IMG/VR virus record: IMGVR_UViG_3300030385_002649
Coordinates: 248,001-312,000 of that record
Strand: one strand, 5' to 3'
Length of the DNA: 64,000 nt
In this document: in pieces, positions 4,148-48,883 of the stretch
Position numbering within the stretch: position 1 is the stretch's first letter
Layout of the letters: each line of letters opens with the position of its first letter
Made by a program: the position numbers and the translations under genes
The notes under the pieces: model-generated
What the model was told of the DNA's origin: nothing
Database searches by the model: none
What the model saw: the letters and a program-made list of their open reading frames with translations, nothing else

Positions 4148-4468
4148 ATGCAAGAGCAAAAAAACACGACTATGCGAATTGGTCGTTCACACGCTAAAGT
4201 ATTATTGGACTGGTTTTCATTTCAAGAGCAATGTGATATTAGGATCGAAAGCTCCTCTATCCACATGGACGAGGTCAAGTTTTCAAACAAGCTAAGGACC
4301 ATCATCGGCAAGCTAAAAAAGCACCGTAGCGGCTCATATGTCAATATCAACTCGATTGAAGCAGGCATGGCATACGAATGGTTCGAAAAGATCCCGAACC
4401 TCCTAATAGACGGTAAAGATCAAAAAATGTATGGAATTCTACAAAACTTCTTCAAAAAGAATCTATAA
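4148..4468 (+). CDS. hypothetical protein
   Basis: ORF 4094..4468; ATG 4148 with GAGG RBS. Confidence 0.6.
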   Translation: MQEQKNTTMRIGRSHAKVLLDWFSFQEQCDIRIESSSIHMDEVKFSNKLRTIIGKLKKHRSGSYVNINSIEAGMAYEWFEKIPNLLIDGKDQKMYGILQNFFKKNL

Positions 4469-5136
4469 TGTTAAGAATTGTGGCGGTTAGTGACACTCAC
4501 GGTCGACATGAAGACGTTAATATCTCCCACGGCGATGTTCTAATTCACTGTGGGGATTTTTCAAATCATGGGACAGAAAAAGATTTCTTCTTATTCCTAA
4601 ATTGGCTCCAATCCCAGCCTCACGAACACAAACTCTTTACTCCGGGGAACCATGACGAATGGGTAGAACAAAATCTTTCTCTAGCTAAATCGATTGTTGA
4701 AGACACGCCGGGTGTCACAATGTTGATAAACGAAGAACACTGTATTGATGGTGTAAAATTCTTCGGATCTCCATTTGTTCCCACTTTTGGCGACTGGTCA
4801 TTCATGTTAGATAGGGATATAATCGGCAGGAAATGGGAACAAATCCCAGAAGATGTGACTGTTCTTTTCACACATGGCCCTGCTTATGGGCACGGCGACT
4901 TGGCTCCACCTTGGGGTTGTTCCTCATTGAGAGGAAAAGTGGCGGGCGATATCGACCTATTGCTTAGGATTAAAGAGGTTAAGCCGCAGCTTCACTTGTT
5001 TGGGCATATTCATGGTGGCTATGGTCGGACTAAATCTGATGCTGTTCCTGAGACGTTGTTTATCAATTGTGCTGTTTGTACTGAAAAGTACAGCCCTGAC
5101 AACACCGCTCAAGTTGTCAATATGCACAACTTATAA
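4468..5136 (+). CDS. calcineurin-like metallophosphoesterase
   Basis: SDTHG, HCGD, GNHD, THGP and GHIH motifs. Confidence 0.92.
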   Translation: MLRIVAVSDTHGRHEDVNISHGDVLIHCGDFSNHGTEKDFFLFLNWLQSQPHEHKLFTPGNHDEWVEQNLSLAKSIVEDTPGVTMLINEEHCIDGVKFFGSPFVPTFGDWSFMLDRDIIGRKWEQIPEDVTVLFTHGPAYGHGDLAPPWGCSSLRGKVAGDIDLLLRIKEVKPQLHLFGHIHGGYGRTKSDAVPETLFINCAVCTEKYSPDNTAQVVNMHNL

Positions 5137-5609
5137 TGGATACAATCTACCTTTTAAAAAGGTTCGATGCGGCAAGGTTTATAGGGTCTAAAATAAATGT
5201 GGAAGAACGCAACGATTGGCATCCTTATTTTAGACCATGGAGATGGGATGTTTCCGGTTATTTTACTGTGGTGAAAACCCTATTGTCACCTCAAGCGATT
5301 GTATTAGATGACTCTTCTTATCTAAAAATTTTATGTTATCCATTCTTCGCCAATAAAACAGGTCGATTCATTTCTCTTGATGAGTTTTATAGTGATGAGC
5401 CTGTGCTTTGTGTTGACTCTGAAAGGGCTGATGGCGTGCCTGAGAGTTATTTGTATGACTGCTCAGATTTATACAGAATTGAATTATCTGATGGAAAACT
5501 ATGCGCAGAAAAGGTCGATCAGGGTAAATATGCTAGTCTAATTGACTGGATGACTAAGCATGTACCATGGCACGTGAATCCGGGTGTAAAACTCTCGTTG
5601 GGGCATTAA
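5136..5609 (+). CDS. hypothetical protein
   Basis: translationally coupled ORF (TAATG). Confidence 0.6.
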   Translation: MDTIYLLKRFDAARFIGSKINVEERNDWHPYFRPWRWDVSGYFTVVKTLLSPQAIVLDDSSYLKILCYPFFANKTGRFISLDEFYSDEPVLCVDSERADGVPESYLYDCSDLYRIELSDGKLCAEKVDQGKYASLIDWMTKHVPWHVNPGVKLSLGH

Positions 5610-5959
5610 TCTGCGAGCTGTGTGAGCACGCCACTAAAGAACTACCCCCAAGACTTGAAAAACTTTTAACTATAAGAACGGAAAACCGGGGCCAGGCCGT
5701 GTGGGGTAGGACTATATGGAATTATGCTAAAGAAGCTGCCTTTCATGATCTGTTTGTCGGTTTCGATATCGACGGTGTTAAACGCACAAAATTAGTAATA
5801 ACCATTTTGATTGGGTGCGAAGACGCTGGAGTGGTTGCGGTCAATCGAATTGGCTTTGGGACCATCTTTCAAGATGATATTATTGAGCGATTGAAGCTCG
5901 AAATTTCTAACGTTATAAGAGAAGCAGATGACTTACTTAAAGCCCAAACTTGCAGCTGA
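5567..5959 (+). CDS. hypothetical protein
   Basis: ORF within the operon. Confidence 0.5.
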   Translation: MARESGCKTLVGALICELCEHATKELPPRLEKLLTIRTENRGQAVWGRTIWNYAKEAAFHDLFVGFDIDGVKRTKLVITILIGCEDAGVVAVNRIGFGTIFQDDIIERLKLEISNVIREADDLLKAQTCS

Positions 5960-31675: not shown

Positions 31676-32713
31676 TTGGATGTGGCTGAAAAACTGCGGA
31701 TCTTATGTTGTAACCCCGACGGAGGGGCGTTCTTCTATATTACTAAAGGTTGGGAAAACGCTTTTAAAGCCTTGGGGCACGATTTTGTTAGGTGGAAAGG
31801 CGATTTAGCAACGCTAGAGAAATATAAGCCACATTTGTATCTTGGTTGCTCTGGCTGGAGGCAGAAATTTCCAGTCGGCAAATACGACACTAAAATTGGT
31901 ATCCATGTCAATCCGTGGGGATCAACCGTGTTGAAGCCAGAACCCAGAGAACCAGATATCAATGAGCCAGCTGAGGCTAGAAAATGGACTCTAGCACAAA
32001 AACCGGATTTCGTTTATTGCTATGGAGGCGCTCACGATATCCCGACCATGTGGAACCTTTGGCAAGAGAAAACCGGAATCCCAGTTGTTCCAATGCCAAC
32101 CGGTGGAGACGCGGTCGTTCATAAACCAGTCAACCCTGACTCGAAATACGTGTGTGATGTAGGGTTTGTTGGGGGTTATTGGCCATATAAAGCTATGAAC
32201 ATCGACAAATTTCTTACTCCCGTCATTAAGAAGTACAACTCTAGAGTGTATGGATGGGGAGGCTGGAAACATATTGGCAATAAATCTAAAGGCCCCATCG
32301 AAGACCATGAAGTCAATAAGCTCTTTTCTTCGGCCAAGATTTGTCCTGCGATATCAGAACCTCACACTATAAGGTACGGTATTGATATTCCTGAAAGGAT
32401 TTGGAAAGTTCCACTCGGCGGCGGCTTCACTATTTCGGACCCTGTAAAAAATCTTGATAAGTATATTAGCTATAACGACTTCATCACAGCAAGAAACCCG
32501 CAGGAATACGCTAACTTAATCGCACATTATCTGCCACGAGAAGAAGCTAGAAAGAAGTTAGCAAAACGGCAAAGACTTGCCGTCCTTAAAGATCATACTT
32601 ATTTTAGTAGAATTCAAGGTTTTTTAAGGCAATGTGGGTTCGATGCGGAAGCTGATGAGGCTCAGAGAATGGTTGACAAATTAGTGAAAGAAGCTGAAAA
32701 TGAAGTGGTATAG
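31676..32713 (+). CDS. GT-B glycosyltransferase (CgeB-like)
   Basis: DVGFVGG, YGWGGW, SAKI, ER.W....GGF.ISD, HTY..R. Confidence 0.82.
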   Translation: MDVAEKLRILCCNPDGGAFFYITKGWENAFKALGHDFVRWKGDLATLEKYKPHLYLGCSGWRQKFPVGKYDTKIGIHVNPWGSTVLKPEPREPDINEPAEARKWTLAQKPDFVYCYGGAHDIPTMWNLWQEKTGIPVVPMPTGGDAVVHKPVNPDSKYVCDVGFVGGYWPYKAMNIDKFLTPVIKKYNSRVYGWGGWKHIGNKSKGPIEDHEVNKLFSSAKICPAISEPHTIRYGIDIPERIWKVPLGGGFTISDPVKNLDKYISYNDFITARNPQEYANLIAHYLPREEARKKLAKRQRLAVLKDHTYFSRIQGFLRQCGFDAEADEAQRMVDKLVKEAENEVV

Positions 32714-32954
32714 CGGGACTATAGAACATAAGGGACATGACGTTCTTATTGAGGGAACGTTCACTGATTCTGTTGTTAGAATTACAGCTAATGGTTACCA
32801 ATTATATGAGAAAGCGATAAATTTTTGGGCATACCAAGAAGTCAATGCCTCTGATATATTCGATAAGTATCAGGGAATGGTAAGAAAATGCGAGAAGAAA
32901 GTTGCTCTACTTGTAGATTCTGGAATTATAGCTTCAGAAGAACGAGACGTATAA
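32700..32954 (+). CDS. hypothetical protein
   Basis: ORF within the operon. Confidence 0.5.
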   Translation: MKWYSGTIEHKGHDVLIEGTFTDSVVRITANGYQLYEKAINFWAYQEVNASDIFDKYQGMVRKCEKKVALLVDSGIIASEERDV

Positions 32955-32999
32955 AAGAGTATTTAAAATATTAGTAGCTAAAGGCTAAGGATAAAATAA

Positions 33000-33710
33000 A
33001 TGACTACAGCAACTCAAACAGCACAAAATACAGAGACTCAAACTAAGAAAACGCTAATTGTACTGTCAGGTAAGACACAAAAATGGTGCCAAAGAATTGC
33101 AGGCATCGCAATGCGAAGAGCCTTTAAAGTCAAGGCTTATCAAAGCGTTCTTGACGAAATGACTAAAAAGGGTGGTCAAGACCAGTTCACTTTCTCTGTC
33201 CTTCCAAAGATTTATCATCGCAAGCGCATCAGCCACACCGACGGACAAGGAAGGATCTTCCTGCACCCCGAGTTCTTCAATGATAACGGGGGTCTCCGCA
33301 AGAAAATTGGCAAAGAATCGAGAGACGAATTGAAAGCCGCTATTTTCAAGGAAGTTGTCCAGCACCACCTCAAGAGAACTAATATTGAGTTTTTCAAGGT
33401 GATGGTACGATGCCCATGGGTTGGGAAAAGAGTGACTGGCGCGGAAGGCTCAGATCAGTCTGCTCGTTCGATCCTTGAAGGTCGCAAGCAAGATAAGAAA
33501 ACCACCAAACGCAAGATGCACGAAGTCTCAACTGGCCTAAAAGAAGAAGTTAGATTCTGGGATCTTACGGCACGCAAACACGTAACAGTTATGGCCGACA
33601 TTTTCCTTGCTGATGGTAAAATTAAGATTGCTCGCGCTGAGCGCGATGGTCGCAAACTTCGGACGATGTTGAAAGGTGCTGAGACCGTTAAAACAAAACT
33701 CAGTCTTTGA
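33000..33710 (+). CDS. basic hypothetical protein
   Basis: AAGGA RBS; GTATTT motif upstream. Confidence 0.65.
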   Translation: MTTATQTAQNTETQTKKTLIVLSGKTQKWCQRIAGIAMRRAFKVKAYQSVLDEMTKKGGQDQFTFSVLPKIYHRKRISHTDGQGRIFLHPEFFNDNGGLRKKIGKESRDELKAAIFKEVVQHHLKRTNIEFFKVMVRCPWVGKRVTGAEGSDQSARSILEGRKQDKKTTKRKMHEVSTGLKEEVRFWDLTARKHVTVMADIFLADGKIKIARAERDGRKLRTMLKGAETVKTKLSL

Positions 33711-34343
33711 TCAGGAAGGCCAATGCCTAACGATCAAAGCGTCGAACGCTAAGTTATTGCTTGTGTCAGCGGCAGTTAGGGCTAGAGCCGTAGTGAGATC
33801 TTCACTTCCTACTGTGCGAGTAAAAATGGCCCCTTGAGTACCGCCAGCAGGGCCTAATGCTATGCTTACACCGGCCAGCTGCGAAGCGGATCCAGTTCGT
33901 ATAATTGTCCCTCTGACTATAAATTCTTGAAAACTGCTAAGAATTGTATTAGTGAATATTGTTGTCGCTCCTAAAGAAATTGTTAGTATGTCAGTGCTTC
34001 CTCCGCTAGTGTTCCGTCCCCAAACCTCAAAAGAGATATTTTCGCCGGTAGCGTTTAGGGTATTAGCGGGTAGAGTCCGAGTAGCATCGGACCCAGTGCC
34101 TGGTGATGTAGAGGTGCTTTCTGTTTCTGGAACTCCAGTAATACCCGCATGATCTAGAGACGCGTGAGCTGCGATAGTCAAATCGCCAACTCCAGTGATA
34201 CCAGTGTGATCTAGAGTCGCATGAGCTGCGATGGTCAAATCGCCAACTCCAGTAATACCAGTGTGGTCTAGAACCGCGTGAGCCGAGACCGCTGCGTCTG
34301 CTGCTTCTAACGGTGACTTTCCGTCGTCTATAAAAAGTGGCAT
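33711..34343 (-). CDS. putative virion fibre protein with 19-aa repeats
   Basis: AHAxLDHTGITGVGDLTIA about 3 times. Confidence 0.6.
   Translation of the reverse strand: MPLFIDDGKSPLEAADAAVSAHAVLDHTGITGVGDLTIAAHATLDHTGITGVGDLTIAAHASLDHAGITGVPETESTSTSPGTGSDATRTLPANTLNATGENISFEVWGRNTSGGSTDILTISLGATTIFTNTILSSFQEFIVRGTIIRTGSASQLAGVSIALGPAGGTQGAIFTRTVGSEDLTTALALTAADTSNNLAFDALIVRHWPS
34131..34283 (-). repeat. 57-nt coding tandem repeat (about 2.7 copies)
   Basis: aactccagt recurs at 34131, 34188 and 34245. Confidence 0.85.

Positions 34344-42296: not shown

Positions 42297-42316
<20 letters not shown>
42164..42316 (-). CDS. small acidic protein (50 aa)
   Basis: translated by hand (MDPLRPEVG...ELIEDLIEADENEN); GGAGG RBS. 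Confidence 0.5.
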
Positions 42317-43060
<744 letters not shown>

Positions 43061-43064
<4 letters not shown>

Positions 43065-43495
43065 CCCAAAGACCTATACCTATTAGTTAGATAACCGACC
43101 ATCGCGTCGACAAGTGGAGCAACTTCATCGCTAAGGCTCAATAGATGAGCGTTCTTCTTAGAAAATCGTCTACCGTGTTGATTAGGTTCAAAAACCCAAG
43201 ATTGCGATTTGACATCTGGCCTACAGGAAAGATTGGCAGACTTATATCTAGTAGAGCACTTGCCATTAGCGAAATCGACGCCAACCTTAGGCAACCTCTT
43301 TCGAAGAGCGGCTCCTAGGGCGAAGTTATAATCTTCTAGAGCCCTATACAATTCTCCATCGAGTTGTTCGATCTTCTCTCTAGCATCTTGAATGTCGCGC
43401 TGGATGTTTAGAACTACGTCCAACTTACTTCTAACTTCTGATCCATCTGGAAGAGACTCAAGTTCTTCGTTCAATACCTTTTCAAACTTTTTCAT
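43061..43495 (-). CDS. hypothetical protein, possibly head-associated
   Basis: MKKFEKVLNEE N-terminus. Confidence 0.6.
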
Positions 43496-44834
43496 TACGT
43501 CCCAGGCTTTTCTTATTTTTGTGCCACTTCTTCAACGCGCAAGAATGGCATAAATATTTACCATGTTTAGCCACCGCCTTGGCGAAATTTTTAGGTTTTA
43601 AACACCTAATGTTTCCACATTGACAAACAGCATCTACAAGATCAACTTTTGCGACATCAACATTGTTTGATCTTTTAATCCAAAAAATGAATTTGTTTTT
43701 TGGAACAGTGTTAACTCGCCGAAAATTATTAAGCTTAGTATATTCCTTTTCGGTAAGTTTCATTTTTGAAGCATGATCCCACATTGTCTTTTTATGATAA
43801 ATGTTTCCTCTGTCATCTTCATAATAATACGAGGGCCTAGTAGACCCATCTTCAATCCAATTTGACGCTTTATAAACCGTACCAGTATGCCCGAAATGTG
43901 GATCTGAAAAAGAAATTAGTAGACATATGTCTGGATCTTTTTTGATGAGCTTTATAGATCTAGATAGCGAAAAGCTAATCAAATTATGTTTCTGATATCT
44001 AGGATCCACAATCAATCGCACTAATTCAAGGACTTGTTTGTTTTGCAGATTGTGCCTCTTGCACACTGTATTATAGCTAGGGTTTGCAAAAATTGTGACA
44101 CCTATCAAAATATCCTTAAGAAAAATGCCATAAGTTTTTCTTGTATTCTTTCTAAACCGTGGGAGGTAATGATATTTAGACATGAACGAAATAGCTTCAT
44201 GCTGTTCAATAGCAGTAACTCTTACGTCCGTAAAATTGAAGTCTATCAATTTTACGTCTTTTTGTGTGATGTCTTTTAAAATCTCTTTAAGCTTATTGAT
44301 GCTTAATGTGTCCCGTTCATTGATATAGACAATTTTCAAATCGGCATGTTTTTTAAGATAATCTGACTTTGCGAGATCATTTCTGATATTGTTAGGAAGA
44401 GAATGCCAATACTCCCCTTGGACTTCTAACAATATATTAAAATTTATAAGATGAAAATCGAATGAGTAAAATCCGATCTCGCATTGTTTTTGATAACTTA
44501 TGTCTAACAATTTTAAGACGTTTTCTACTGCGAGTTCTGGCTTAGTATCGCAAGTTTTCCCTGCGCATGGCGGTCTGGATCCCGCTTTTCTTTCAGCTGC
44601 CAATTTTAAAGCTTGCGCTCTCGCCTTGCTTTTATGAAGATCAGAAGAAAAATACTCGTCTCTTTTTTCTTTTGCTTCTTTAGAACGCAACCCAGTAGTC
44701 ATTTTGTTTATTGATTTGCGGTAAGACGAACTTTTAGAATCCCATGCTTTTTTCATTGCAGACGAATGCCTACACCATCTACAATTTAAATCTGATCCTT
44801 TTAGATGGCCATTAGCGCAAGTTTTGTTAGACAT
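43482..44834 (-). CDS. fusion of a Vsr/DUF559-like endonuclease and a Mom-like GNAT DNA-modification domain
   Basis: E....L...Y..Q...FYSFDF...LEVQGEYWH...D..K; then YHYL, ELVRL, LISFSDP..GHTGTVYKASNW; AT-rich. Confidence 0.8.
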   Translation of the reverse strand: MSNKTCANGHLKGSDLNCRWCRHSSAMKKAWDSKSSSYRKSINKMTTGLRSKEAKEKRDEYFSSDLHKSKARAQALKLAAERKAGSRPPCAGKTCDTKPELAVENVLKLLDISYQKQCEIGFYSFDFHLINFNILLEVQGEYWHSLPNNIRNDLAKSDYLKKHADLKIVYINERDTLSINKLKEILKDITQKDVKLIDFNFTDVRVTAIEQHEAISFMSKYHYLPRFRKNTRKTYGIFLKDILIGVTIFANPSYNTVCKRHNLQNKQVLELVRLIVDPRYQKHNLISFSLSRSIKLIKKDPDICLLISFSDPHFGHTGTVYKASNWIEDGSTRPSYYYEDDRGNIYHKKTMWDHASKMKLTEKEYTKLNNFRRVNTVPKNKFIFWIKRSNNVDVAKVDLVDAVCQCGNIRCLKPKNFAKAVAKHGKYLCHSCALKKWHKNKKSLGRNEKV

Positions 44835-44851
44835 CAGTATTAAATACTGAT
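44833..44851. promoter_or_regulatory. inverted repeat over the promoter motif and start codon
   Basis: ATCAGTATT-A-AATACTGAT. Confidence 0.5.
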
Positions 44852-47721
44852 CACGATTCTGTCGAGTCGCTGGTTAGTTCCAACTGTCCGTGCGTGAATT
44901 CATTGAATGAAGTGAGTTGATCGCGGATTTCGACTTCTCGAATAATAGCACCAGGCCACAATCTGAAACCAACTTTTCCAACTTCTTGGAGAGCGGCGAC
45001 TGGGAAGTAAGGAGTGCTCACAACGACTGGGACTTCAAGAGAGGCGGAGGCAGAAGGATCAGGGTTCACAAGAAGACCATTCCACCATACCCACATCTGC
45101 CCGTCGCGGTACATGATTTCGAGTTCGTTCCATTTCTCCTCGTCACCATCAACTGGCGCTGGGAGTGATCCACCTTCGTAGACCTTAAAACCGCTTGGCT
45201 CTGATGGCAATTCTTCTGTTCCGAAAACTATAAACCCGTCTTGAGTAAGAACTCGGCTTGTTGAAAACTGTCCAGGGCGGAAGTCGCGGACGAAATCATC
45301 AGAAAAATCGTCTTCAACGTTCAAACGATAAGCTTCATTCATGTCGAGAACACCAGCTCTAACTTGCAGCTGGACCGACTCAGCGTCAGTGTTGTCATTG
45401 ATCGAGAACTCTAATCTTAGAGCTGTAGCGCTGCAGTCTTGTCTTAAAAGCTCGACAACTGTCGTTCTATCTGGGACTGGAGTGCCCAAAGCTTCCTCAA
45501 TTTCAGTAATGTTAACCGCATCTTCGCCAGCAAGATCTGTCGCTCCGGTTCCTTCAATGTCAGGAATGGCATCGATGTCGAATGGGAACTTATCCAAGAA
45601 TCCGACAAGCATTACGCCATCGTCGTCCGAAGCTGGGAAGGCTGTTTTAAATTGCCAACTCCATGTGGTGTTTCTCCAGATACCCGTCAGAGATCTGACA
45701 GTTCCACTAGGAGGAAGGTCATGCCAGTTCACACCCTTAACAACAATATATTCGTTGCCTTGGAAAGGACCTGTTGCGACAGTGCCTCGTCTAACAACCT
45801 TCATATAACGGTCATCATAGCTGTCGATTGGACCTCTAAGAATGACGTCGATTGGTGGGAAACGGCTGTTATCTGGTCGACCAACTAAAGCCTTAACATA
45901 GACGTTTTTGTGATCACCTCTATGCCAGAGCCACACTGGACGTTCTTGATCCGATTGAGGAGGTGTTTCTGAGACTCTTAGCCCTGGGATGTTAGGATCG
46001 ATATCTGCAACGTATTGATTGTTGATCGCTACGCCGGACGGGTCGCCCGTCGAAGAGTTCACGAAAATATCGAAAGTATCTCCAGCCTGTACGAGGCTGG
46101 CTTGGTCGTCAGGATCAAAGAGAGTGATCCGGGAGGCCGTGTTCTCTACTATAGTAAATTCAACGTTCTGCAGATTTCCAGACGTGAAAGTAACCATTCT
46201 GTCAGCTAACTCATTGGTTGCGAACTGACCCGACGCGTTAAGTGCGCCTTGGGCTATAATGACAAAATTCGGAGTTGGGTCGTCTACGACATCGTCAGGC
46301 TCTACAGAATCAACTGTGTCTTGCCTGATAACTTGGCCCTCTTCAGTAGAAGCTGTAACTTCACCGTCGTCAGACAGAAGGAATGGGTCTTCAAAAACCG
46401 TCATCCCCCATTGTGATTTTTCAAAGAGTCTAACGTCAGAGAGGTTCCTGTCGATAGAAGTGATTTCAGTAGGAGCTACACCAGGAAGTTCACCTCTGCA
46501 TTCGATCGTCTCTCCGAAACGAACGCAAGCTGATTTACTCCACAGAGTTCCTGGATTCAGCTTTGGAGGTCTGCTAAAGAATCTCTGTACGAGACGTTGA
46601 CCGTTAACCACGCCGATTTGAAATTCCCAAATTTGAACTAGCGTTCCGACTGGCAAGATGTCACAAGTGGCGTCTCGTACTAGTTCTCTAGGAGCGAACA
46701 AGTCAGTTGGAGAGTTCTCAGGGTTGTTATATTGCCAAACATTGGTGGCCGTGAAACCATCGCCCTTAGGCTGAGCGGTATTGATGGACCAAAAGCGACA
46801 GGTATATTGGTTCGTCGATAAGATCGTTGAGGAGAACCCAGTAACGACAGCCATCTGTCTAGTTAAAGTGTGTCCCTTATAAAGAATTGACCCCAAAAGG
46901 TCTGGATCGCTTTGGACATCTAGGTCGAATCTGATTTGGTTGCCGTCATCGTCGAGACCCATAAACCAGACTGATTGTGGGACGCCCGTCGATCCCGGTG
47001 TGAACGCCCAGCCTACGTTAGTTGTAGAATTGGAGTTTCTGGCCAAGATCAATTCGAACTTAGCCCTGTTTGGGTTGGGGGTGTTGAATCTTTGGAATAG
47101 AAGGGCTGGAAAATTACCCTTCATATTGAGAGTTGGGCCAGGGTTCGATGGGTTTAGGATCGTACTTTCTGGGAATTGGTAGATCTTAAGTTCGCCGTAT
47201 ACGTTTACGTCTGGCATCTTACCAGCGCAGGATGGCGGCCTAACAGCCGCTACATCCGATTCGTCTTGGATCCAGAAGATCTGAGCGCATTCTTCACACC
47301 CACAGTTTAGTGGTAATGGAGAATCTACAGTGAACCGGATTACGTTTCCGATTCTTTCTAGGCTGATGAATTCGGTTCCAGCAGCGAGCATCACGTCGCC
47401 TTGGAGCATTCCTCCATCATCTGGGAAACCTGATCCGCTGAACCCTAGAACTCCGAGGCGAGTTTGAGTGACCGCATCCAGTTTTGCCTTATCCGATGAG
47501 GACATCAACCCTGGAGTATCTGTGGTCGCGTTTGGAATCGGATCTTCAGCGATGTGCGTCTGTCCGTGGAATGACGGGATGATAATCTCCGATTCCTTGC
47601 CGTAAAGTGTACAGGTTTCTGCATCGAATTGGTAGCCTGTTGTCAGGCCATCCGGTCCGGAGATGCGCAAAAATTGCTGGTCCACTAGCTGCGGCTTGTT
47701 TGGGACTTTATATTGTACCAC
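44851..47721 (-). CDS. large putative virion (tail/baseplate) protein
   Basis: 956 aa, acidic, with a GLMS..DK.KLD fibre motif; GGAG RBS and CAAAAATAA upstream. Confidence 0.65.
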   Translation of the reverse strand: MVQYKVPNKPQLVDQQFLRISGPDGLTTGYQFDAETCTLYGKESEIIIPSFHGQTHIAEDPIPNATTDTPGLMSSSDKAKLDAVTQTRLGVLGFSGSGFPDDGGMLQGDVMLAAGTEFISLERIGNVIRFTVDSPLPLNCGCEECAQIFWIQDESDVAAVRPPSCAGKMPDVNVYGELKIYQFPESTILNPSNPGPTLNMKGNFPALLFQRFNTPNPNRAKFELILARNSNSTTNVGWAFTPGSTGVPQSVWFMGLDDDGNQIRFDLDVQSDPDLLGSILYKGHTLTRQMAVVTGFSSTILSTNQYTCRFWSINTAQPKGDGFTATNVWQYNNPENSPTDLFAPRELVRDATCDILPVGTLVQIWEFQIGVVNGQRLVQRFFSRPPKLNPGTLWSKSACVRFGETIECRGELPGVAPTEITSIDRNLSDVRLFEKSQWGMTVFEDPFLLSDDGEVTASTEEGQVIRQDTVDSVEPDDVVDDPTPNFVIIAQGALNASGQFATNELADRMVTFTSGNLQNVEFTIVENTASRITLFDPDDQASLVQAGDTFDIFVNSSTGDPSGVAINNQYVADIDPNIPGLRVSETPPQSDQERPVWLWHRGDHKNVYVKALVGRPDNSRFPPIDVILRGPIDSYDDRYMKVVRRGTVATGPFQGNEYIVVKGVNWHDLPPSGTVRSLTGIWRNTTWSWQFKTAFPASDDDGVMLVGFLDKFPFDIDAIPDIEGTGATDLAGEDAVNITEIEEALGTPVPDRTTVVELLRQDCSATALRLEFSINDNTDAESVQLQVRAGVLDMNEAYRLNVEDDFSDDFVRDFRPGQFSTSRVLTQDGFIVFGTEELPSEPSGFKVYEGGSLPAPVDGDEEKWNELEIMYRDGQMWVWWNGLLVNPDPSASASLEVPVVVSTPYFPVAALQEVGKVGFRLWPGAIIREVEIRDQLTSFNEFTHGQLELTSDSTES

Positions 47722-47869: not shown

Positions 47870-48883
47870 ATGACAAGCCTAGAACAAGAAATCAAGTTGA
47901 TCTATAAAACTGAGCTTCATCAGCACGTTGATGGGTCTATCCCGGTTCAAGTAACCTGGGACCTCATGACTAAATATGGCCTAAACCCGGTCGATACTAT
48001 TGAGGAAATGAGAACACATCTTGTAGTTCAGCCTGAAGACGAAGGCGCTGGCTTGTTGGCTTACCTCCGAAAGTTTCATTACCCTTTGTGGGTTACCCAG
48101 TTCTATGATAATCTCCAAGTAGTGGCTTACGAGATCGCTAAAGAGGCTTATCATAAAGGCGTGCGCGTCTTTGAACTTCGCTATTCTCCTACCATTCATA
48201 CGCACGCCGGGTTGACTCCGAGACAAGCTATCACCTCTATCCTTCACGGGCTAAAAGATGCCGAGGACGAATTCCCAGGTCTCGTGAGTGGGTTGGTAGT
48301 AATTGCAATGAGGCATATGGGCCCTCATATCGCCAAGATTTTAGCCAGGCAATCAATTGGAGAAGGCGAAAAGTACCACAGAGGCGCTGGAGTTGTTGGG
48401 TTCGACATCGCAGGAGCCGAAAGAGGAAATCCACCAGGCTTGTTTAGAGAAGCATACGACATCGCAAAAACTGCAGGTCTCGGATGCACAGTCCACGCAG
48501 GAGAAGAGCTTGGGCCACAAGCTACATGGGACGCTATCGATGTTTTAGGGGCGACCAGAATCGGACACGCTTGCTCAGCTGCGCTAGACGAAACACTTCT
48601 TAGAAGGATGGCGGCGGATAAAATCTGCGTCGAAGTGTGCCACACTTCGAACTACCAAACTGGCGCGGTGAAAAAAGAGGAAGCGCATCCGATTAAGAGA
48701 TTCTTAGAATTCGGCGTCCCAATTGCTATCTGTACGGACAACACTACGGTCAGTAATACCGACCAAATCAAGGAAAACCTAATCATCTGCCAGGAACTTG
48801 ACCTAACTATCGACGACCTCAAGAAAATCCATGAAGACGCCAAACAATTCAGCTTTATCGGGAGAGTCCGTGATTCTCTCTAA
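47870..48883 (+). CDS. add: adenosine/adenine deaminase family protein
   Basis: ELHQHVDGS, ELRYSP, VVGFDIAG.E, TVHAGE, RIGH, EVC.TSN, TDN. Confidence 0.92.
   Translation: MTSLEQEIKLIYKTELHQHVDGSIPVQVTWDLMTKYGLNPVDTIEEMRTHLVVQPEDEGAGLLAYLRKFHYPLWVTQFYDNLQVVAYEIAKEAYHKGVRVFELRYSPTIHTHAGLTPRQAITSILHGLKDAEDEFPGLVSGLVVIAMRHMGPHIAKILARQSIGEGEKYHRGAGVVGFDIAGAERGNPPGLFREAYDIAKTAGLGCTVHAGEELGPQATWDAIDVLGATRIGHACSAALDETLLRRMAADKICVEVCHTSNYQTGAVKKEEAHPIKRFLEFGVPIAICTDNTTVSNTDQIKENLIICQELDLTIDDLKKIHEDAKQFSFIGRVRDSL

What the first reader, a model, noticed from the sequence alone, without database searches (positions are those of the whole stretch)
43482..44834. Nuclease-Mom fusion: candidate self-protecting cut-and-modify mobile element
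Seen: one 450-aa ORF with Cys/His Zn motifs, a basic linker, a Vsr/DUF559-type nuclease (FDF...EVQGEYWH...D..K) and a Mom-like domain (YHYL, EL.RL, SFSD...GH.G..YKASNW), ending in a Zn finger. It is visibly AT-richer than the flanking virion genes and has its own promoter-like motif. Known: Mu Mom is a GNAT-fold enzyme that hypermodifies adenine and blocks restriction; Vsr-like EDxHD nucleases act as homing endonucleases. Inference: a free-standing homing element or single-chain restriction-modification-like system that uses adenine acylation rather than methylation for self-protection and may give the phage anti-restriction cover.
Basis: partly seen in the sequence, partly recalled or inferred. 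Interest (0 to 1): 0.75.

Follow-up and report, generated by a model that had tools for sequence, protein, structure and literature searches.

The report
Mobile nuclease gene with Mom domain
This gene in a 371-kb marine jumbo phage looks like a selfish "homing" nuclease gene fused to an apparently intact Mom-type DNA-modifying domain; the fusion type is common and already described, and whether the modifying domain shields the carrier genome from its own nuclease is untested.

Summary
Window 43482-44834 (-) encodes a 450-aa protein with five parts: an N-terminal Cys/His finger, a basic helical linker, an EDxHD (Vsr-like) nuclease, a Mom-family GNAT domain and a C-terminal zinc ribbon. Its GC is 0.35 against about 0.46 in the flanks.

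Both catalytic sets look intact. The nuclease has E100/D126/H144/D153. The Mom domain has H222/Y223/R273/S287/D311/Y321, but Mu's essential R151 is His here.

Comparative genomics supports a free-standing homing endonuclease gene. Five related phages carry an ortholog at the same junction between two conserved genes (g956|g144), and a sixth copy lies just 3' of a diverged g956 homolog. Four close relatives have those genes abutting with nothing between. Occupied and empty sites are interleaved on the host-gene tree. The genome holds three divergent AT-rich paralogs, and the two that could be placed group with copies at the same site in other phages. The protein is homologous over both domains to an annotated T4-type "Hef-like" homing endonuclease whose Mom motifs have decayed.

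The architecture is not new. At least 300 clusters at 50% identity exist, and Iyer et al. 2021 described jumbo-phage Mom-REase fusions with the same self-protection prediction. Self-protection by momylation remains plausible and untested. The promoter motif is no better than chance.

The parts
43482..44834 (-). Whole gene: 450-aa nuclease-Mom fusion (paralog A of three in the genome), GC 0.35
   Evidence: Genome coordinates 291482-292834.
44763..44834 (-). N-terminal CHCC zinc-finger-like module (residues 1-24: C6, H10, C18, C21)
   Evidence: Motif read from the sequence. Conserved in P0003, P0008 and P0016 and in the family consensus. Metal binding is inferred.
44565..44762 (-). Basic, all-helical linker (residues 25-90)
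   Evidence: AF2 helices 19-33, 35-50, 52-63 and 65-83. No family match. A DNA-binding role is inferred.
44265..44564 (-). EDxHD (Vsr-like, PD-(D/E)xK-derived) endonuclease domain (residues 91-190); catalytic E100, D126, (Q139), H144, D153
   Evidence: 3r3p at E 1e-3 for the single sequence and 5.8e-16 for the family profile. PADLOC HEase model 1.7e-7. Residue conservation.
43665..44249 (-). Mom-family GNAT domain (residues 196-390); H222, Y223, R273, S287, D311, Y321 equal Mu H58, Y59, R111, S124, D149, Y159; H313 stands at Mu R151
   Evidence: Pfam PF25680 111.4 bits. phrog_1384 5e-37. 8bv8 matches. Residue mapping. Invariant columns.
43530..43637 (-). C-terminal zinc ribbon (residues 400-435: C404, C406, C429, C432). 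The same module sits at the N-terminus of paralog B and is repeated 2-3 times in homologs
   Evidence: (paralog B match to residues 405-442).
44835..44850 (-). 16-nt AT-rich spacer between the g956 stop and the HEG start. It contains an 8-bp inverted repeat that pairs the first two bases of the AUG
   Evidence: The hairpin is in the MFE fold but z = -1.5, not significant, and it is not conserved in L023 or L028.
43482..43495 (-). 14-nt overlap of the HEG 3' end with the start of downstream gene g144; right-hand insertion junction
44851..47721 (-). g956: conserved upstream host gene whose 3' end is the insertion site (likely region of the homing target). It carries an intein in one relative
43061..43495 (-). 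g144: conserved downstream host gene. It abuts g956 directly in genomes with an empty site

Best explanation
This is a free-standing homing endonuclease gene (HEG) of the EDxHD/Vsr-like, Hef-type lineage. It is inserted at the very 3' end of a conserved gene (g956), just upstream of g144, in a 370.8-kb marine jumbo phage. It is one of three divergent copies in that genome.

Shown here: the domain architecture, intact catalytic motifs in both enzymatic domains, AT-rich composition, occupied/empty polymorphism at the same junction in related phages, and site-specific lineages.

Inferred mechanism: in a mixed infection the zinc modules, the basic linker and possibly the Mom domain's DNA-binding surface place the EDxHD nuclease on a sequence near the g956/g144 boundary of a HEG-less relative. 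The nuclease cuts there. Recombinational repair from the HEG-bearing genome then copies the gene in.

The Mom domain keeps the catalytic core of Mu Mom. It most likely still modifies adenine N6 in DNA, in Mu by glycyl transfer from Gly-tRNA(Gly). The most economical role is to modify the nuclease's own recognition sites on the resident genome, limiting self-cleavage, with possible side benefit against host restriction. This last step is inference only. In T4-type Hef-like relatives the Mom catalytic residues have decayed while the nuclease residues persist, so catalysis by the Mom domain appears to be an accessory to the nuclease, not the reverse.
For: Nuclease:
- The family profile hits I-Bth0305I (3r3p) at E 5.8e-16.
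- E100, D126, H144 and D153 align to its E170, D196, H213 and D222.
- D126 is in 55/55 family members, H144 in 54/55 and D153 in 54/55.
- The PADLOC 'HEase' model hits at 1.7e-7.

Hef link:
- BLASTP to the Yersinia phage JC221 'Hef-like homing endonuclease' gives E 1e-12 over residues 93-374.
- hhalign gives 99.3% probability, E 3.6e-20, across both domains.
- phrog_3339 'homing endonuclease' spans residues 36-374.
- Taylor et al. 2011 placed Hef-type enzymes in the EDxHD family (PMC3239194).

Mobility:
- In L013-L016 (g956 64-66% identical) g956 and g144 overlap or lie within about 25 bp, with no HEG.
- Orthologs P0003, P0005, P0004 and P0006 (51-55% identical) occupy the same junction in L023, L028, L038 and L039. 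P0008 lies directly 3' of a g956 homolog in L026.
- On the g956 tree occupied and empty sites interleave. L028 (occupied) is sister to L015 (empty) at 100/100, and at least 2 changes are forced.
- A complete 395-kb relative has no Mom gene at all.
- Three paralogs share 24-33% identity and all have GC 0.35-0.37 against 0.43-0.48 in flanks.
- Paralog B's site is empty in L031 and occupied in L033 and L036.
- Paralogs A and B cluster by genomic site, not by genome.
- HEG GC is 3-12 points below either flank in five other loci.

Mom domain:
- PF25680 scores 111 bits, and the top structural match is 8bv8.
- Mu H58, Y59, R111, S124, D149 and Y159 are conserved in 56-58 of 58 aligned sequences. Their functional importance comes from PMC13219725 and PMC7261163.
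Against: - No cleavage, homing or modification has been measured for this protein or any intact-Mom member.
- The target site is not identified. Junction sequences are too diverged to define it.
- R151, essential in Mu Mom, is His here (T or H in the family). W48 (Mu dimer interface) and W181 are not conserved. The domain could have different chemistry or be inactive.
- Patchy distribution and low GC also fit ordinary accessory or anti-defence genes.
- From my memory of Sandegren et al. 2005 (paper not held), phage U5 Hef cuts HEG-containing DNA too. Self-protection is therefore not a general property of the lineage.
- Laying public runs showed only the HEG-containing form, but only assembler contigs were available.
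Confidence: 0.72

Rival explanations
1. Single-chain restriction-modification-like weapon (the Iyer et al. 2021 reading). The Mom domain momylates the whole phage genome for protection. The nuclease degrades unmodified host DNA or superinfecting phage DNA with little site specificity. The gene is an accessory conflict gene, not a homing element.
For: This is the published prediction for jumbo-phage Mom-REase fusions, including multiple copies per genome, e.g. five in PA5oct (PMC7824862). Both catalytic sets are intact. Phage accessory conflict genes are also patchy and AT-rich.
Against: - The gene is inserted at one exact gene boundary, overlapping the downstream start codon. Its orthologs are tied to that same boundary in at least 5 other phages, while close relatives have a clean empty site.
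- Paralogs track genomic sites rather than genomes.
- A complete related genome has no Mom at all.
- The nearest characterised nucleases are homing enzymes: I-Bth0305I and Hef-type.
- One Mom gene would suffice for genome-wide protection, yet there are three, each with its own nuclease and different DNA-binding modules.
Confidence: 0.2
2. Homing endonuclease in which the Mom-like domain is only a DNA-binding or base-flipping recognition module and no longer catalyses modification, as seems to be the case in T4-type Hef-like proteins.
For: - The JC221 Hef-like protein and Vibrio phage 2.275.O protein keep the fold but have lost Y59, D149 or the S124 region, while the nuclease motif is intact.
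- In the window's protein R151 (essential in Mu), W48 and W181 are not conserved.
- Mom's HTH-like insertion is predicted to bind the DNA major groove.
Against: - H, Y, R, S, D and Y of the active site are invariant or nearly so across more than 50 fusion proteins at 26-55% identity. They are among the few invariant columns of the family, which is hard to explain without selection for catalysis.
- R151 is also absent (Gly) from stand-alone Mom-like proteins of Listeria and Staphylococcus phages.
Confidence: 0.25
3. A decaying or domesticated remnant: a formerly mobile gene now inactive, or retained for an unrelated host-phage function.
For: Many free-standing HEGs in phages are defunct. No HEG-less variant was seen in the source population (weak).
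Against: The ORF is intact, all catalytic residues of both domains are present, and there are no frameshifts or stops. Orthologs at 51-55% identity keep full length.
Confidence: 0.07

Closest known systems
Hef-type free-standing homing endonucleases of T4-like phages (prototype: phage U5 Hef; 'Hef-like' genes in LIMEstone1, Acj9, JC221)
   Same: - Homologous over nuclease plus Mom-like region (E 1e-12 and hhalign 99.3%).
- Free-standing genes wedged between conserved structural genes. JC221's lies between the capsid vertex and major capsid genes.
- Multi-copy per genome: four in LIMEstone1 (PMC3296691).
   Different: - The T4-type protein has degenerate Mom motifs (Y59->L, D149->N, S124 region missing) and falls below the Pfam Mom threshold. 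The window's protein keeps the catalytic core.
- The N-terminal modules differ.
- The prototype U5 Hef sequence itself was not compared here.
I-Bth0305I and the EDxHD homing endonuclease family (PDB 3r3p; Taylor et al. 2011, PMC3239194)
   Same: It is the closest solved nuclease (profile E 5.8e-16). The E/D/H/D catalytic residues are the same.
   Different: I-Bth0305I is intron-encoded. Its nuclease is C-terminal, its DNA-binding modules are NUMOD/HTH, and it has no GNAT domain. Here the nuclease is central, followed by Mom, and flanked by Zn modules.
Phage Mu Mom (PDB 8bv8; Gly-tRNA(Gly)-dependent adenine N6 hypermodification, PMC13219725)
   Same: Same Pfam family and the best structural match. 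H58, Y59, R111, S124, D149 and Y159 are conserved.
   Different: - Mu Mom is a stand-alone 241-aa dimer under Com/C control.
- Here the domain is fused to a nuclease, there is no com-like gene, R151 is His, and W48 and W181 are not conserved.
- Activity and donor are unknown.
Jumbo-phage 'Mom-REase' fusions described by Iyer, Anantharaman, Krishnan, Burroughs and Aravind 2021 (PMC7824862, section 3.4.7)
   Same: Same architecture class, same kind of genome (jumbo phage) and several copies per genome. They made the same prediction that momylation protects the phage's own DNA from the fused nuclease.
   Different: They read the fusions as restriction-modification-like conflict systems against the host or superinfecting phages. 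The site-specific occupied/empty polymorphism and the Hef homology found here point to homing elements.
[quoted passage not shown]
   Same: A distant fold and active-site relationship (Pfam Vsr E 9e-4, TIGR00632 E 2e-4).
   Different: It scores far below both curated cutoffs (19.5 vs 27 bits; 21.7 vs 97.85 bits). It is not a repair Vsr.

Membership tests
EDxHD (Vsr-like) homing endonucleases | Sequence or fold homology to the I-Bth0305I catalytic domain | tested here: met
   3r3p at E 1e-3 for the single sequence and 5.8e-16 for the family profile.
EDxHD (Vsr-like) homing endonucleases | Composite catalytic motif E...D...x...H...D | tested here: met
   E100, D126, Q139 (x), H144 and D153 align to E170, D196, N208, H213 and D222. 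D, H and D are 54-55 of 55 in the family; E is E or Q.
EDxHD (Vsr-like) homing endonucleases | Genomic behaviour of a mobile element (intron, intein or free-standing insertion with occupied and empty sites) | tested here: met
   Occupied in the window, L023, L028, L038 and L039 (plus L026). Empty in L013-L016. Interleaved on the host-gene tree.
EDxHD (Vsr-like) homing endonucleases | Site-specific double-strand cleavage of the HEG-less allele, and homing | not testable with these tools
   Needs biochemistry or phage crosses.
Hef-type homing endonucleases | Homology to Hef proteins over their full conserved region | tested here: met
   The JC221 annotated 'Hef-like' protein gives BLASTP 1e-12 and hhalign 99.3% over nuclease plus Mom-like region. 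phrog_3339 hits at 4.5e-10. The prototype U5 Hef was not available, so this rests on an annotation.
Mom family (Pfam PF25680) | Score above Pfam's gathering threshold | tested here: met
   111.4 bits against 27.1. Paralogs B and C score 98.8 and 31.1 bits.
Mom family (Pfam PF25680) | GNAT fold closest to Mu Mom | tested here: met
   AF2 model pLDDT 87.7. Foldseek's top hits are 8bv8_B and 8bv8_A at E 8.6e-13 and 3.6e-12, ahead of all other GNATs at 1e-5 or weaker.
Mom family (Pfam PF25680) | Residues essential or important in Mu Mom: R111, S124, D149, H58, Y59, Y159 | tested here: met
   R273, S287, D311, H222, Y223 and Y321 are conserved in 56-58 of 58 sequences.
Mom family (Pfam PF25680) | R151 (essential in Mu), W48 (dimer interface) and W181 | tested here: not met
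   H313, H212 and I345 stand at these positions. The family has T or H at 151, and stand-alone Listeria and Staphylococcus Mom-like proteins have G.
Mom family (Pfam PF25680) | HTH-like insertion required for activity (Mu residues ~175-209) | tested here: inconclusive
   A helical segment (H348-357, H362-368) follows the conserved SYYY/HKK strands, with invariant Y336, Y338, K348 and E362. Equivalence to Mu's insertion was not established by superposition.
Mom family (Pfam PF25680) | tRNA-dependent modification of adenine N6 in dsDNA | not testable with these tools
   Needs LC-MS or SMRT analysis after expression. The genome does encode two tRNA-Gly genes, which is not evidence of use.
Single-chain restriction-modification system | Modification by the same protein blocks its own nuclease at the same sites | not testable with these tools
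   No data are available. This is predicted in PMC7824862.
Vsr mismatch-repair endonuclease (TIGR00632 / PF03852) | Score above the curated cutoffs | tested here: not met
   21.7 against 97.85 bits, and 19.5 against 27 bits.

The most novel reading that the evidence does not exclude
A homing endonuclease that carries its own immunity as a covalently fused DNA hypermodification enzyme. The Mom domain would momylate adenines in the nuclease's recognition site on the resident genome, using Gly-tRNA(Gly) or another aminoacyl donor. The element would then cut only naive genomes. That makes it a selfish hybrid of a homing element and a restriction-modification system, with T4-type Hef as its degenerate descendant that has lost the immunity function. 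No homing endonuclease with modification-based self-protection has been demonstrated experimentally, to my knowledge.
Probability: 0.3. Interest if true: 0.75.

Novelty: new member of a known kind. Interest (0 to 1): 0.45.

Why it matters
Two threads in the literature turn out to describe one protein family. One is the Hef/EDxHD homing endonucleases, with experimental homing in T-even phages. The other is the 'Mom-REase' fusions of jumbo phages, read computationally as restriction-modification-like systems.

The family is large, with hundreds of clusters at 50% identity. Most members keep an intact Mom active site, and the T4-type members have lost it.

If the Mom domain is active, these would be homing elements with modification-based self-immunity. 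They would also be a ready source of sequence-targeted adenine-hypermodifying enzymes. That is timely, because Mom's tRNA-dependent chemistry was solved only recently (PMC13219725).

For phage genomics there is a practical point. Counting these genes as 'DNA modification systems' may overstate anti-restriction capacity and understate the load of selfish elements in jumbo phages. For this particular window the finding is a clear, well-behaved example and not a new kind of system.

Tried and rejected
- Near-identical DNA search in the phage collection found nothing.
- Sandegren et al. 2005 (PMC1275590) and Iyer et al. 2009 (PMC2995806) are not held. Statements about U5 Hef behaviour therefore rest on reviews and my memory.
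- PHROG and Pfam annotation of the flanking genes g956, g144, g255 and g713 gave nothing useful. The Atlas search for g956 gave only sub-threshold tail-fibre-like and concanavalin-like leads.
- The search for related loci with g144 found no relatives by pattern. Its homologs were found later by tblastn within loci fetched through g956.
- The 'own promoter' claim does not hold: one 9/12 match, and the regional count is not above shuffles.
- I suspected a conserved hairpin over the start codon. Only the window's 8-bp stem is in the MFE fold (z = -1.5), and the L023 and L028 inverted repeats do not hold up. Rejected as a conserved feature.
- I first thought an ancestral GGAAC-TAA-ATG junction was retained at the HEG's 3' end. 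This is convincing only for the sister pair L015 (empty) and L028 (occupied). It is too weak in the window and L023 to generalise.
- In the pairwise HMMER alignment Mu S124 appeared to align to His. The multiple alignment places it on S287, conserved in 56 of 58 sequences, so the pairwise reading was rejected.
- Laying public runs to look for HEG-less alleles was uninformative. Only assembler contigs were available, and all carry the HEG.
- Foldseek on the whole model returned only GNAT hits, so the nuclease fold was not independently confirmed by structure search. Profile-sequence evidence was used instead.
- No complex prediction was run, because no binding claim is made.
Full report
**1. 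The observation**

Window 43482-44834 (minus strand) is an intact 450-aa ORF. It is a sharp AT-rich island. GC is 0.33-0.37 across the gene and 0.35 overall. The 3-kb flanks are 0.454 and 0.479, and the 370,804-bp genome is 0.454.

- C6/H10/C18/C21 at the N-terminus.
- A Lys/Arg-rich helical linker.
- FDF, EVQGEYWH and D..K in the nuclease.
- YHYL, ELVRL and SFSD...GHTGTVYKASNW in the Mom domain.
- A C-terminal CxC...CxxC ribbon.

The N-terminal finger is conserved in homologs. The true start is therefore M1, and the database gene call (P0002, 424 aa) is truncated.

The one item that does not stand is the "own promoter". There is a single 9/12 sigma-70-like match, in a region whose match count is not above shuffles. 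The gene lies 16 nt after the upstream gene's stop, on the same strand, and overlaps the downstream gene's start by 14 nt. Co-transcription is therefore the simpler reading.

**2. The domains**

*Mom domain.*
- Pfam PF25680 scores 111.4 bits against a 27.1-bit cutoff (E 5.9e-32, residues 204-390).
- phrog_1384 "Mom-like DNA modification protein" hits at 5e-37.
- The solved Mu Mom structure 8bv8 is hit at E 3.4e-8 by sequence and 5.9e-19 by family profile.
- 8bv8 is the top Foldseek match (E 8.6e-13) of an AlphaFold2 model with mean pLDDT 87.7.

*Nuclease domain.*
- As a single sequence it is sub-threshold for Pfam Vsr (19.5 bits against 27).
- It hits 3r3p, the catalytic domain of I-Bth0305I and prototype of the EDxHD homing endonuclease family, at E 1e-3 alone and 5.8e-16 with the family profile.
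- PADLOC's "HEase homing endonuclease" model hits residues 81-187 at 1.7e-7.
- It is not a repair Vsr: TIGR00632 scores 21.7 bits against a 97.85-bit cutoff.

**3. Are the active sites intact?**

*Nuclease.* Using the 3r3p alignment and Taylor et al. 2011 (PMC3239194), E100, D126, Q139, H144 and D153 correspond to E170, D196, N208, H213 and D222. Across 55 fusion proteins D126 is in 55/55, H144 in 54/55 and D153 in 54/55.

*Mom.* Silva et al. 2026 (PMC13219725) and Karambelkar et al. 2020 (PMC7261163) give the key residues. R111, S124 and R151 are essential. D149, H58, Y59, Y159, W48 and W181 are important.

In a 58-sequence alignment that includes Mu Mom:

| Mu Mom residue | Window protein | State across the alignment |
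|---|---|---|
| H58 | H222 | conserved |
| Y59 | Y223 | conserved |
| R111 | R273 | conserved |
| S124 | S287 | conserved |
| D149 | D311 | conserved |
| Y159 | Y321 | conserved |
| R151 | H313 | T or H in the family; G in stand-alone Listeria/Staphylococcus Mom-like proteins |
| W48 | H212 | not conserved |
| W181 | I345 | not conserved |

The six conserved positions hold in 56-58 of 58 sequences. An earlier pairwise alignment that put S124 on a His was an alignment artefact.

The catalytic core is therefore under strong purifying selection. H222, Y223, R273, D311 and Y321 are among only 12 invariant columns of the family. Three residues important in Mu differ, so activity is plausible but the details may differ.

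**4. What phage, and how many copies?**

The window is bases 248001-312000 of a complete virus record of 370,804 bp with direct terminal repeats. The source is a marine metagenome.

The genome has three nuclease-Mom genes:

| Paralog | Genome coordinates | Length | Identity to A | Gene GC |
|---|---|---|---|---|
| A (this finding) | 291482-292834 (-) | 450 aa | - | 0.35 |
| B | 203126-204580 (+) | 484 aa | 33% | 0.367 |
| C | 32218-33885 (-) | 555 aa | 24% | 0.359 |

Their flanks are 0.43-0.48 GC. Each paralog has different accessory DNA-binding modules. B carries the zinc ribbon at its N-terminus followed by W-x4-Y-R-type repeats. C has four or five CxC/SCGxC ribbons. There is no stand-alone Mom gene.

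**5. Mobility, the decisive evidence**

Using the upstream gene (g956) as a handle, nine related jumbo-phage loci were fetched.

*Empty sites.* The four closest relatives (L013-L016, g956 64-66% identical) keep the synteny adenosine-deaminase-like, g956, g144, g255, g713, g529. In them g956 and g144 overlap (TAATG) or lie within about 25 bp, with no nuclease-Mom gene.

*Occupied sites.* The closest homologs of the window's protein sit at exactly this junction in other phages:
- P0003 in L023, P0005 in L028, P0004 in L038 and P0006 in L039, all 51-55% identical.
- P0008 (45% identical) lies directly 3' of a more diverged g956 homolog in L026.

*Distribution.*
- On a g956 tree, occupied and empty genomes are interleaved. 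L028 (occupied) and L015 (empty) are sisters at 100/100 support, and well-supported branches force at least two gains or losses.
- In that sister pair the empty allele's last g956 codons and stop (…GTA GGA ACA TAA TG) reappear as the last codons of the inserted gene in L028 (…GCA GGA ACT TAA ac ATG). Meanwhile L028's g956 has acquired a new, shorter C-terminus. This places that insertion within the last few codons of g956.
- A complete 395-kb relative has no Mom gene at all. Another relative has one at a different locus.

*Paralog B.* It behaves the same way. Its site is empty in L031, with about 92 bp between the flanking genes. In L033 it is occupied by a 37%-identical homolog in the opposite orientation. 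In L036 two nuclease-Mom genes surround a flanking gene that is itself split by a 2.1-kb insert.

*Tree of the nuclease-Mom proteins.* The three paralogs of this genome do not group together. Site-B copies from three phages form a clade at 100/99 support, and site-A copies form another. Paralog C sits on a long branch and its placement is unreliable. In five other loci the gene is 3-12 GC points below either flank. In L028 the g956 homolog also carries an intein, so this gene is a repeated target of selfish elements.

Precise junctional insertion, an occupied/empty polymorphism that does not follow host phylogeny, site-bound lineages, multiple divergent copies and AT-richness together are the standard signature of free-standing homing endonuclease genes in large phages.

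**6. Link to known homing enzymes**

- A tblastn search of the phage collection found the T4-like Yersinia phage JC221 "putative Hef-like homing endonuclease". That gene is wedged between the capsid-vertex and major-capsid genes.
- It aligns to residues 93-374 of the window protein, covering both nuclease and Mom regions (E 1e-12). Profile-profile comparison gives 99.3% probability, E 3.6e-20.
- In that protein the nuclease motif is intact but the Mom motifs are degenerate (Y59 to L, D149 to N, S124 region deleted). It falls below Pfam's Mom threshold.
- Taylor et al. 2011 had already placed Hef-type enzymes in the EDxHD family. Hef-like genes are multi-copy free-standing HEGs in LIMEstone1. 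Hef of phage U5 is cited as a homing endonuclease that cuts nrdB.
- I found no paper in the held library that notes the Mom-like C-terminal half of Hef proteins.

**7. Prior art on the fusion**

Iyer et al. [quoted passage not shown] In their reading momylation protects the phage's own DNA, and phages such as PA5oct carry five such enzymes.

An exhaustive search shows the family is large. There are 3201 representatives at E <= 1e-3 and 300 at E <= 1e-30. Nearly all of the listed matches span nuclease plus Mom.

**8. Interpretation**

The best-supported reading is a free-standing EDxHD/Hef-type homing endonuclease gene that targets the g956/g144 boundary region.

The Mom domain's conserved active site argues that it is still an enzyme. 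The nuclease is the constant partner, while Mom catalysis has decayed in some lineages. This suggests Mom activity serves the element, most economically as immunity of the carrier genome to its own nuclease, possibly with incidental anti-restriction benefit. That step is inference.

Three rivals were weighed:
- A genome-wide R-M-like weapon (Iyer et al.).
- A catalytically silent recognition module.
- A decayed remnant.

They are scored in the rival-explanations section. The first is disfavoured by the site-bound behaviour. The second is disfavoured by the invariance of the catalytic residues. The third is disfavoured by the intact ORF and motifs.

**9. Novelty and score**

This is a new, clean member of a known and abundant kind. 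What this analysis adds is the link between the "Mom-REase" fusions and Hef-type homing endonucleases, plus comparative evidence that intact-Mom members behave as site-specific mobile elements.

It is moderately interesting as a testable model for modification-based self-immunity in a homing element. It is not a new category.

Noticed in passing
window ~42604-42642 (-), inside ORF 42297-43064 (g255): A perfect (AAG)x12 trinucleotide repeat encodes a run of 12 lysines. Public-run contigs break exactly here (42598-42649), so repeat length may vary in the population or confound assembly.
   Followed up: partly
L028:728-4867: The g956 homolog of a related phage is 1379 aa. It carries an intein (PF14890, with Hint and faint LAGLIDADG hits) inserted after about residue 135. 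The gene beside the HEG is therefore itself a target of another selfish element.
   Followed up: partly
L036:331-3212 and L036:6-308, 4259-5695: In one relative the gene flanking paralog B (B_left272 homolog) is split at about codon 119 by a 2.1-kb insert of unknown nature (intron or HEG?). It is bracketed by two nuclease-Mom genes, so this looks like a hotspot of mobile elements.
   Followed up: no
genome G000:C1:203126-204580 (+) and 32218-33885 (-), outside the window: Two further nuclease-Mom paralogs (484 and 555 aa) carry different zinc-ribbon and repeat modules. Both are AT-rich islands. Paralog C has only a weak Mom score (31 bits).
   Followed up: partly
genome G000:C1:216974-240544, 5579-5834 and 348611-350293, outside the window: ARAGORN finds 34 tRNA genes. 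They include two tRNA-Gly (tcc, gcc), a tRNA with anticodon tca (called SeC, possibly an opal-suppressor-like tRNA) and one with a 4-base anticodon loop call (taag). ORFs in the window read normally under table 11 with TGA stops, so no recoding was assumed.
   Followed up: no
window 47870-48883 (+): An adenosine/AMP-deaminase-like gene (PF00962 in the L023 and L028 orthologs) is conserved divergently next to g956 in all close relatives. This is an unusual neighbour for what looks like a virion or tail-fibre module.
   Followed up: no
window 44833-44853 (-): An 8-bp perfect inverted repeat (AUCAGUAU/AUACUGAU) spans the g956 stop-proximal spacer and the first two bases of the HEG start codon. 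It could damp translation, as seen for some T4 homing endonuclease genes, but it is not significant (z = -1.5) and not conserved in orthologous loci.
   Followed up: yes
P0002 (own genome), L028:4890-5000, L038:2323-2400: Automatic gene calls for this family often start at an internal Met and drop the conserved N-terminal Cys/His finger (P0002 424 aa against 450 aa). P0005 and P0004 extend upstream of their called starts.
   Followed up: partly
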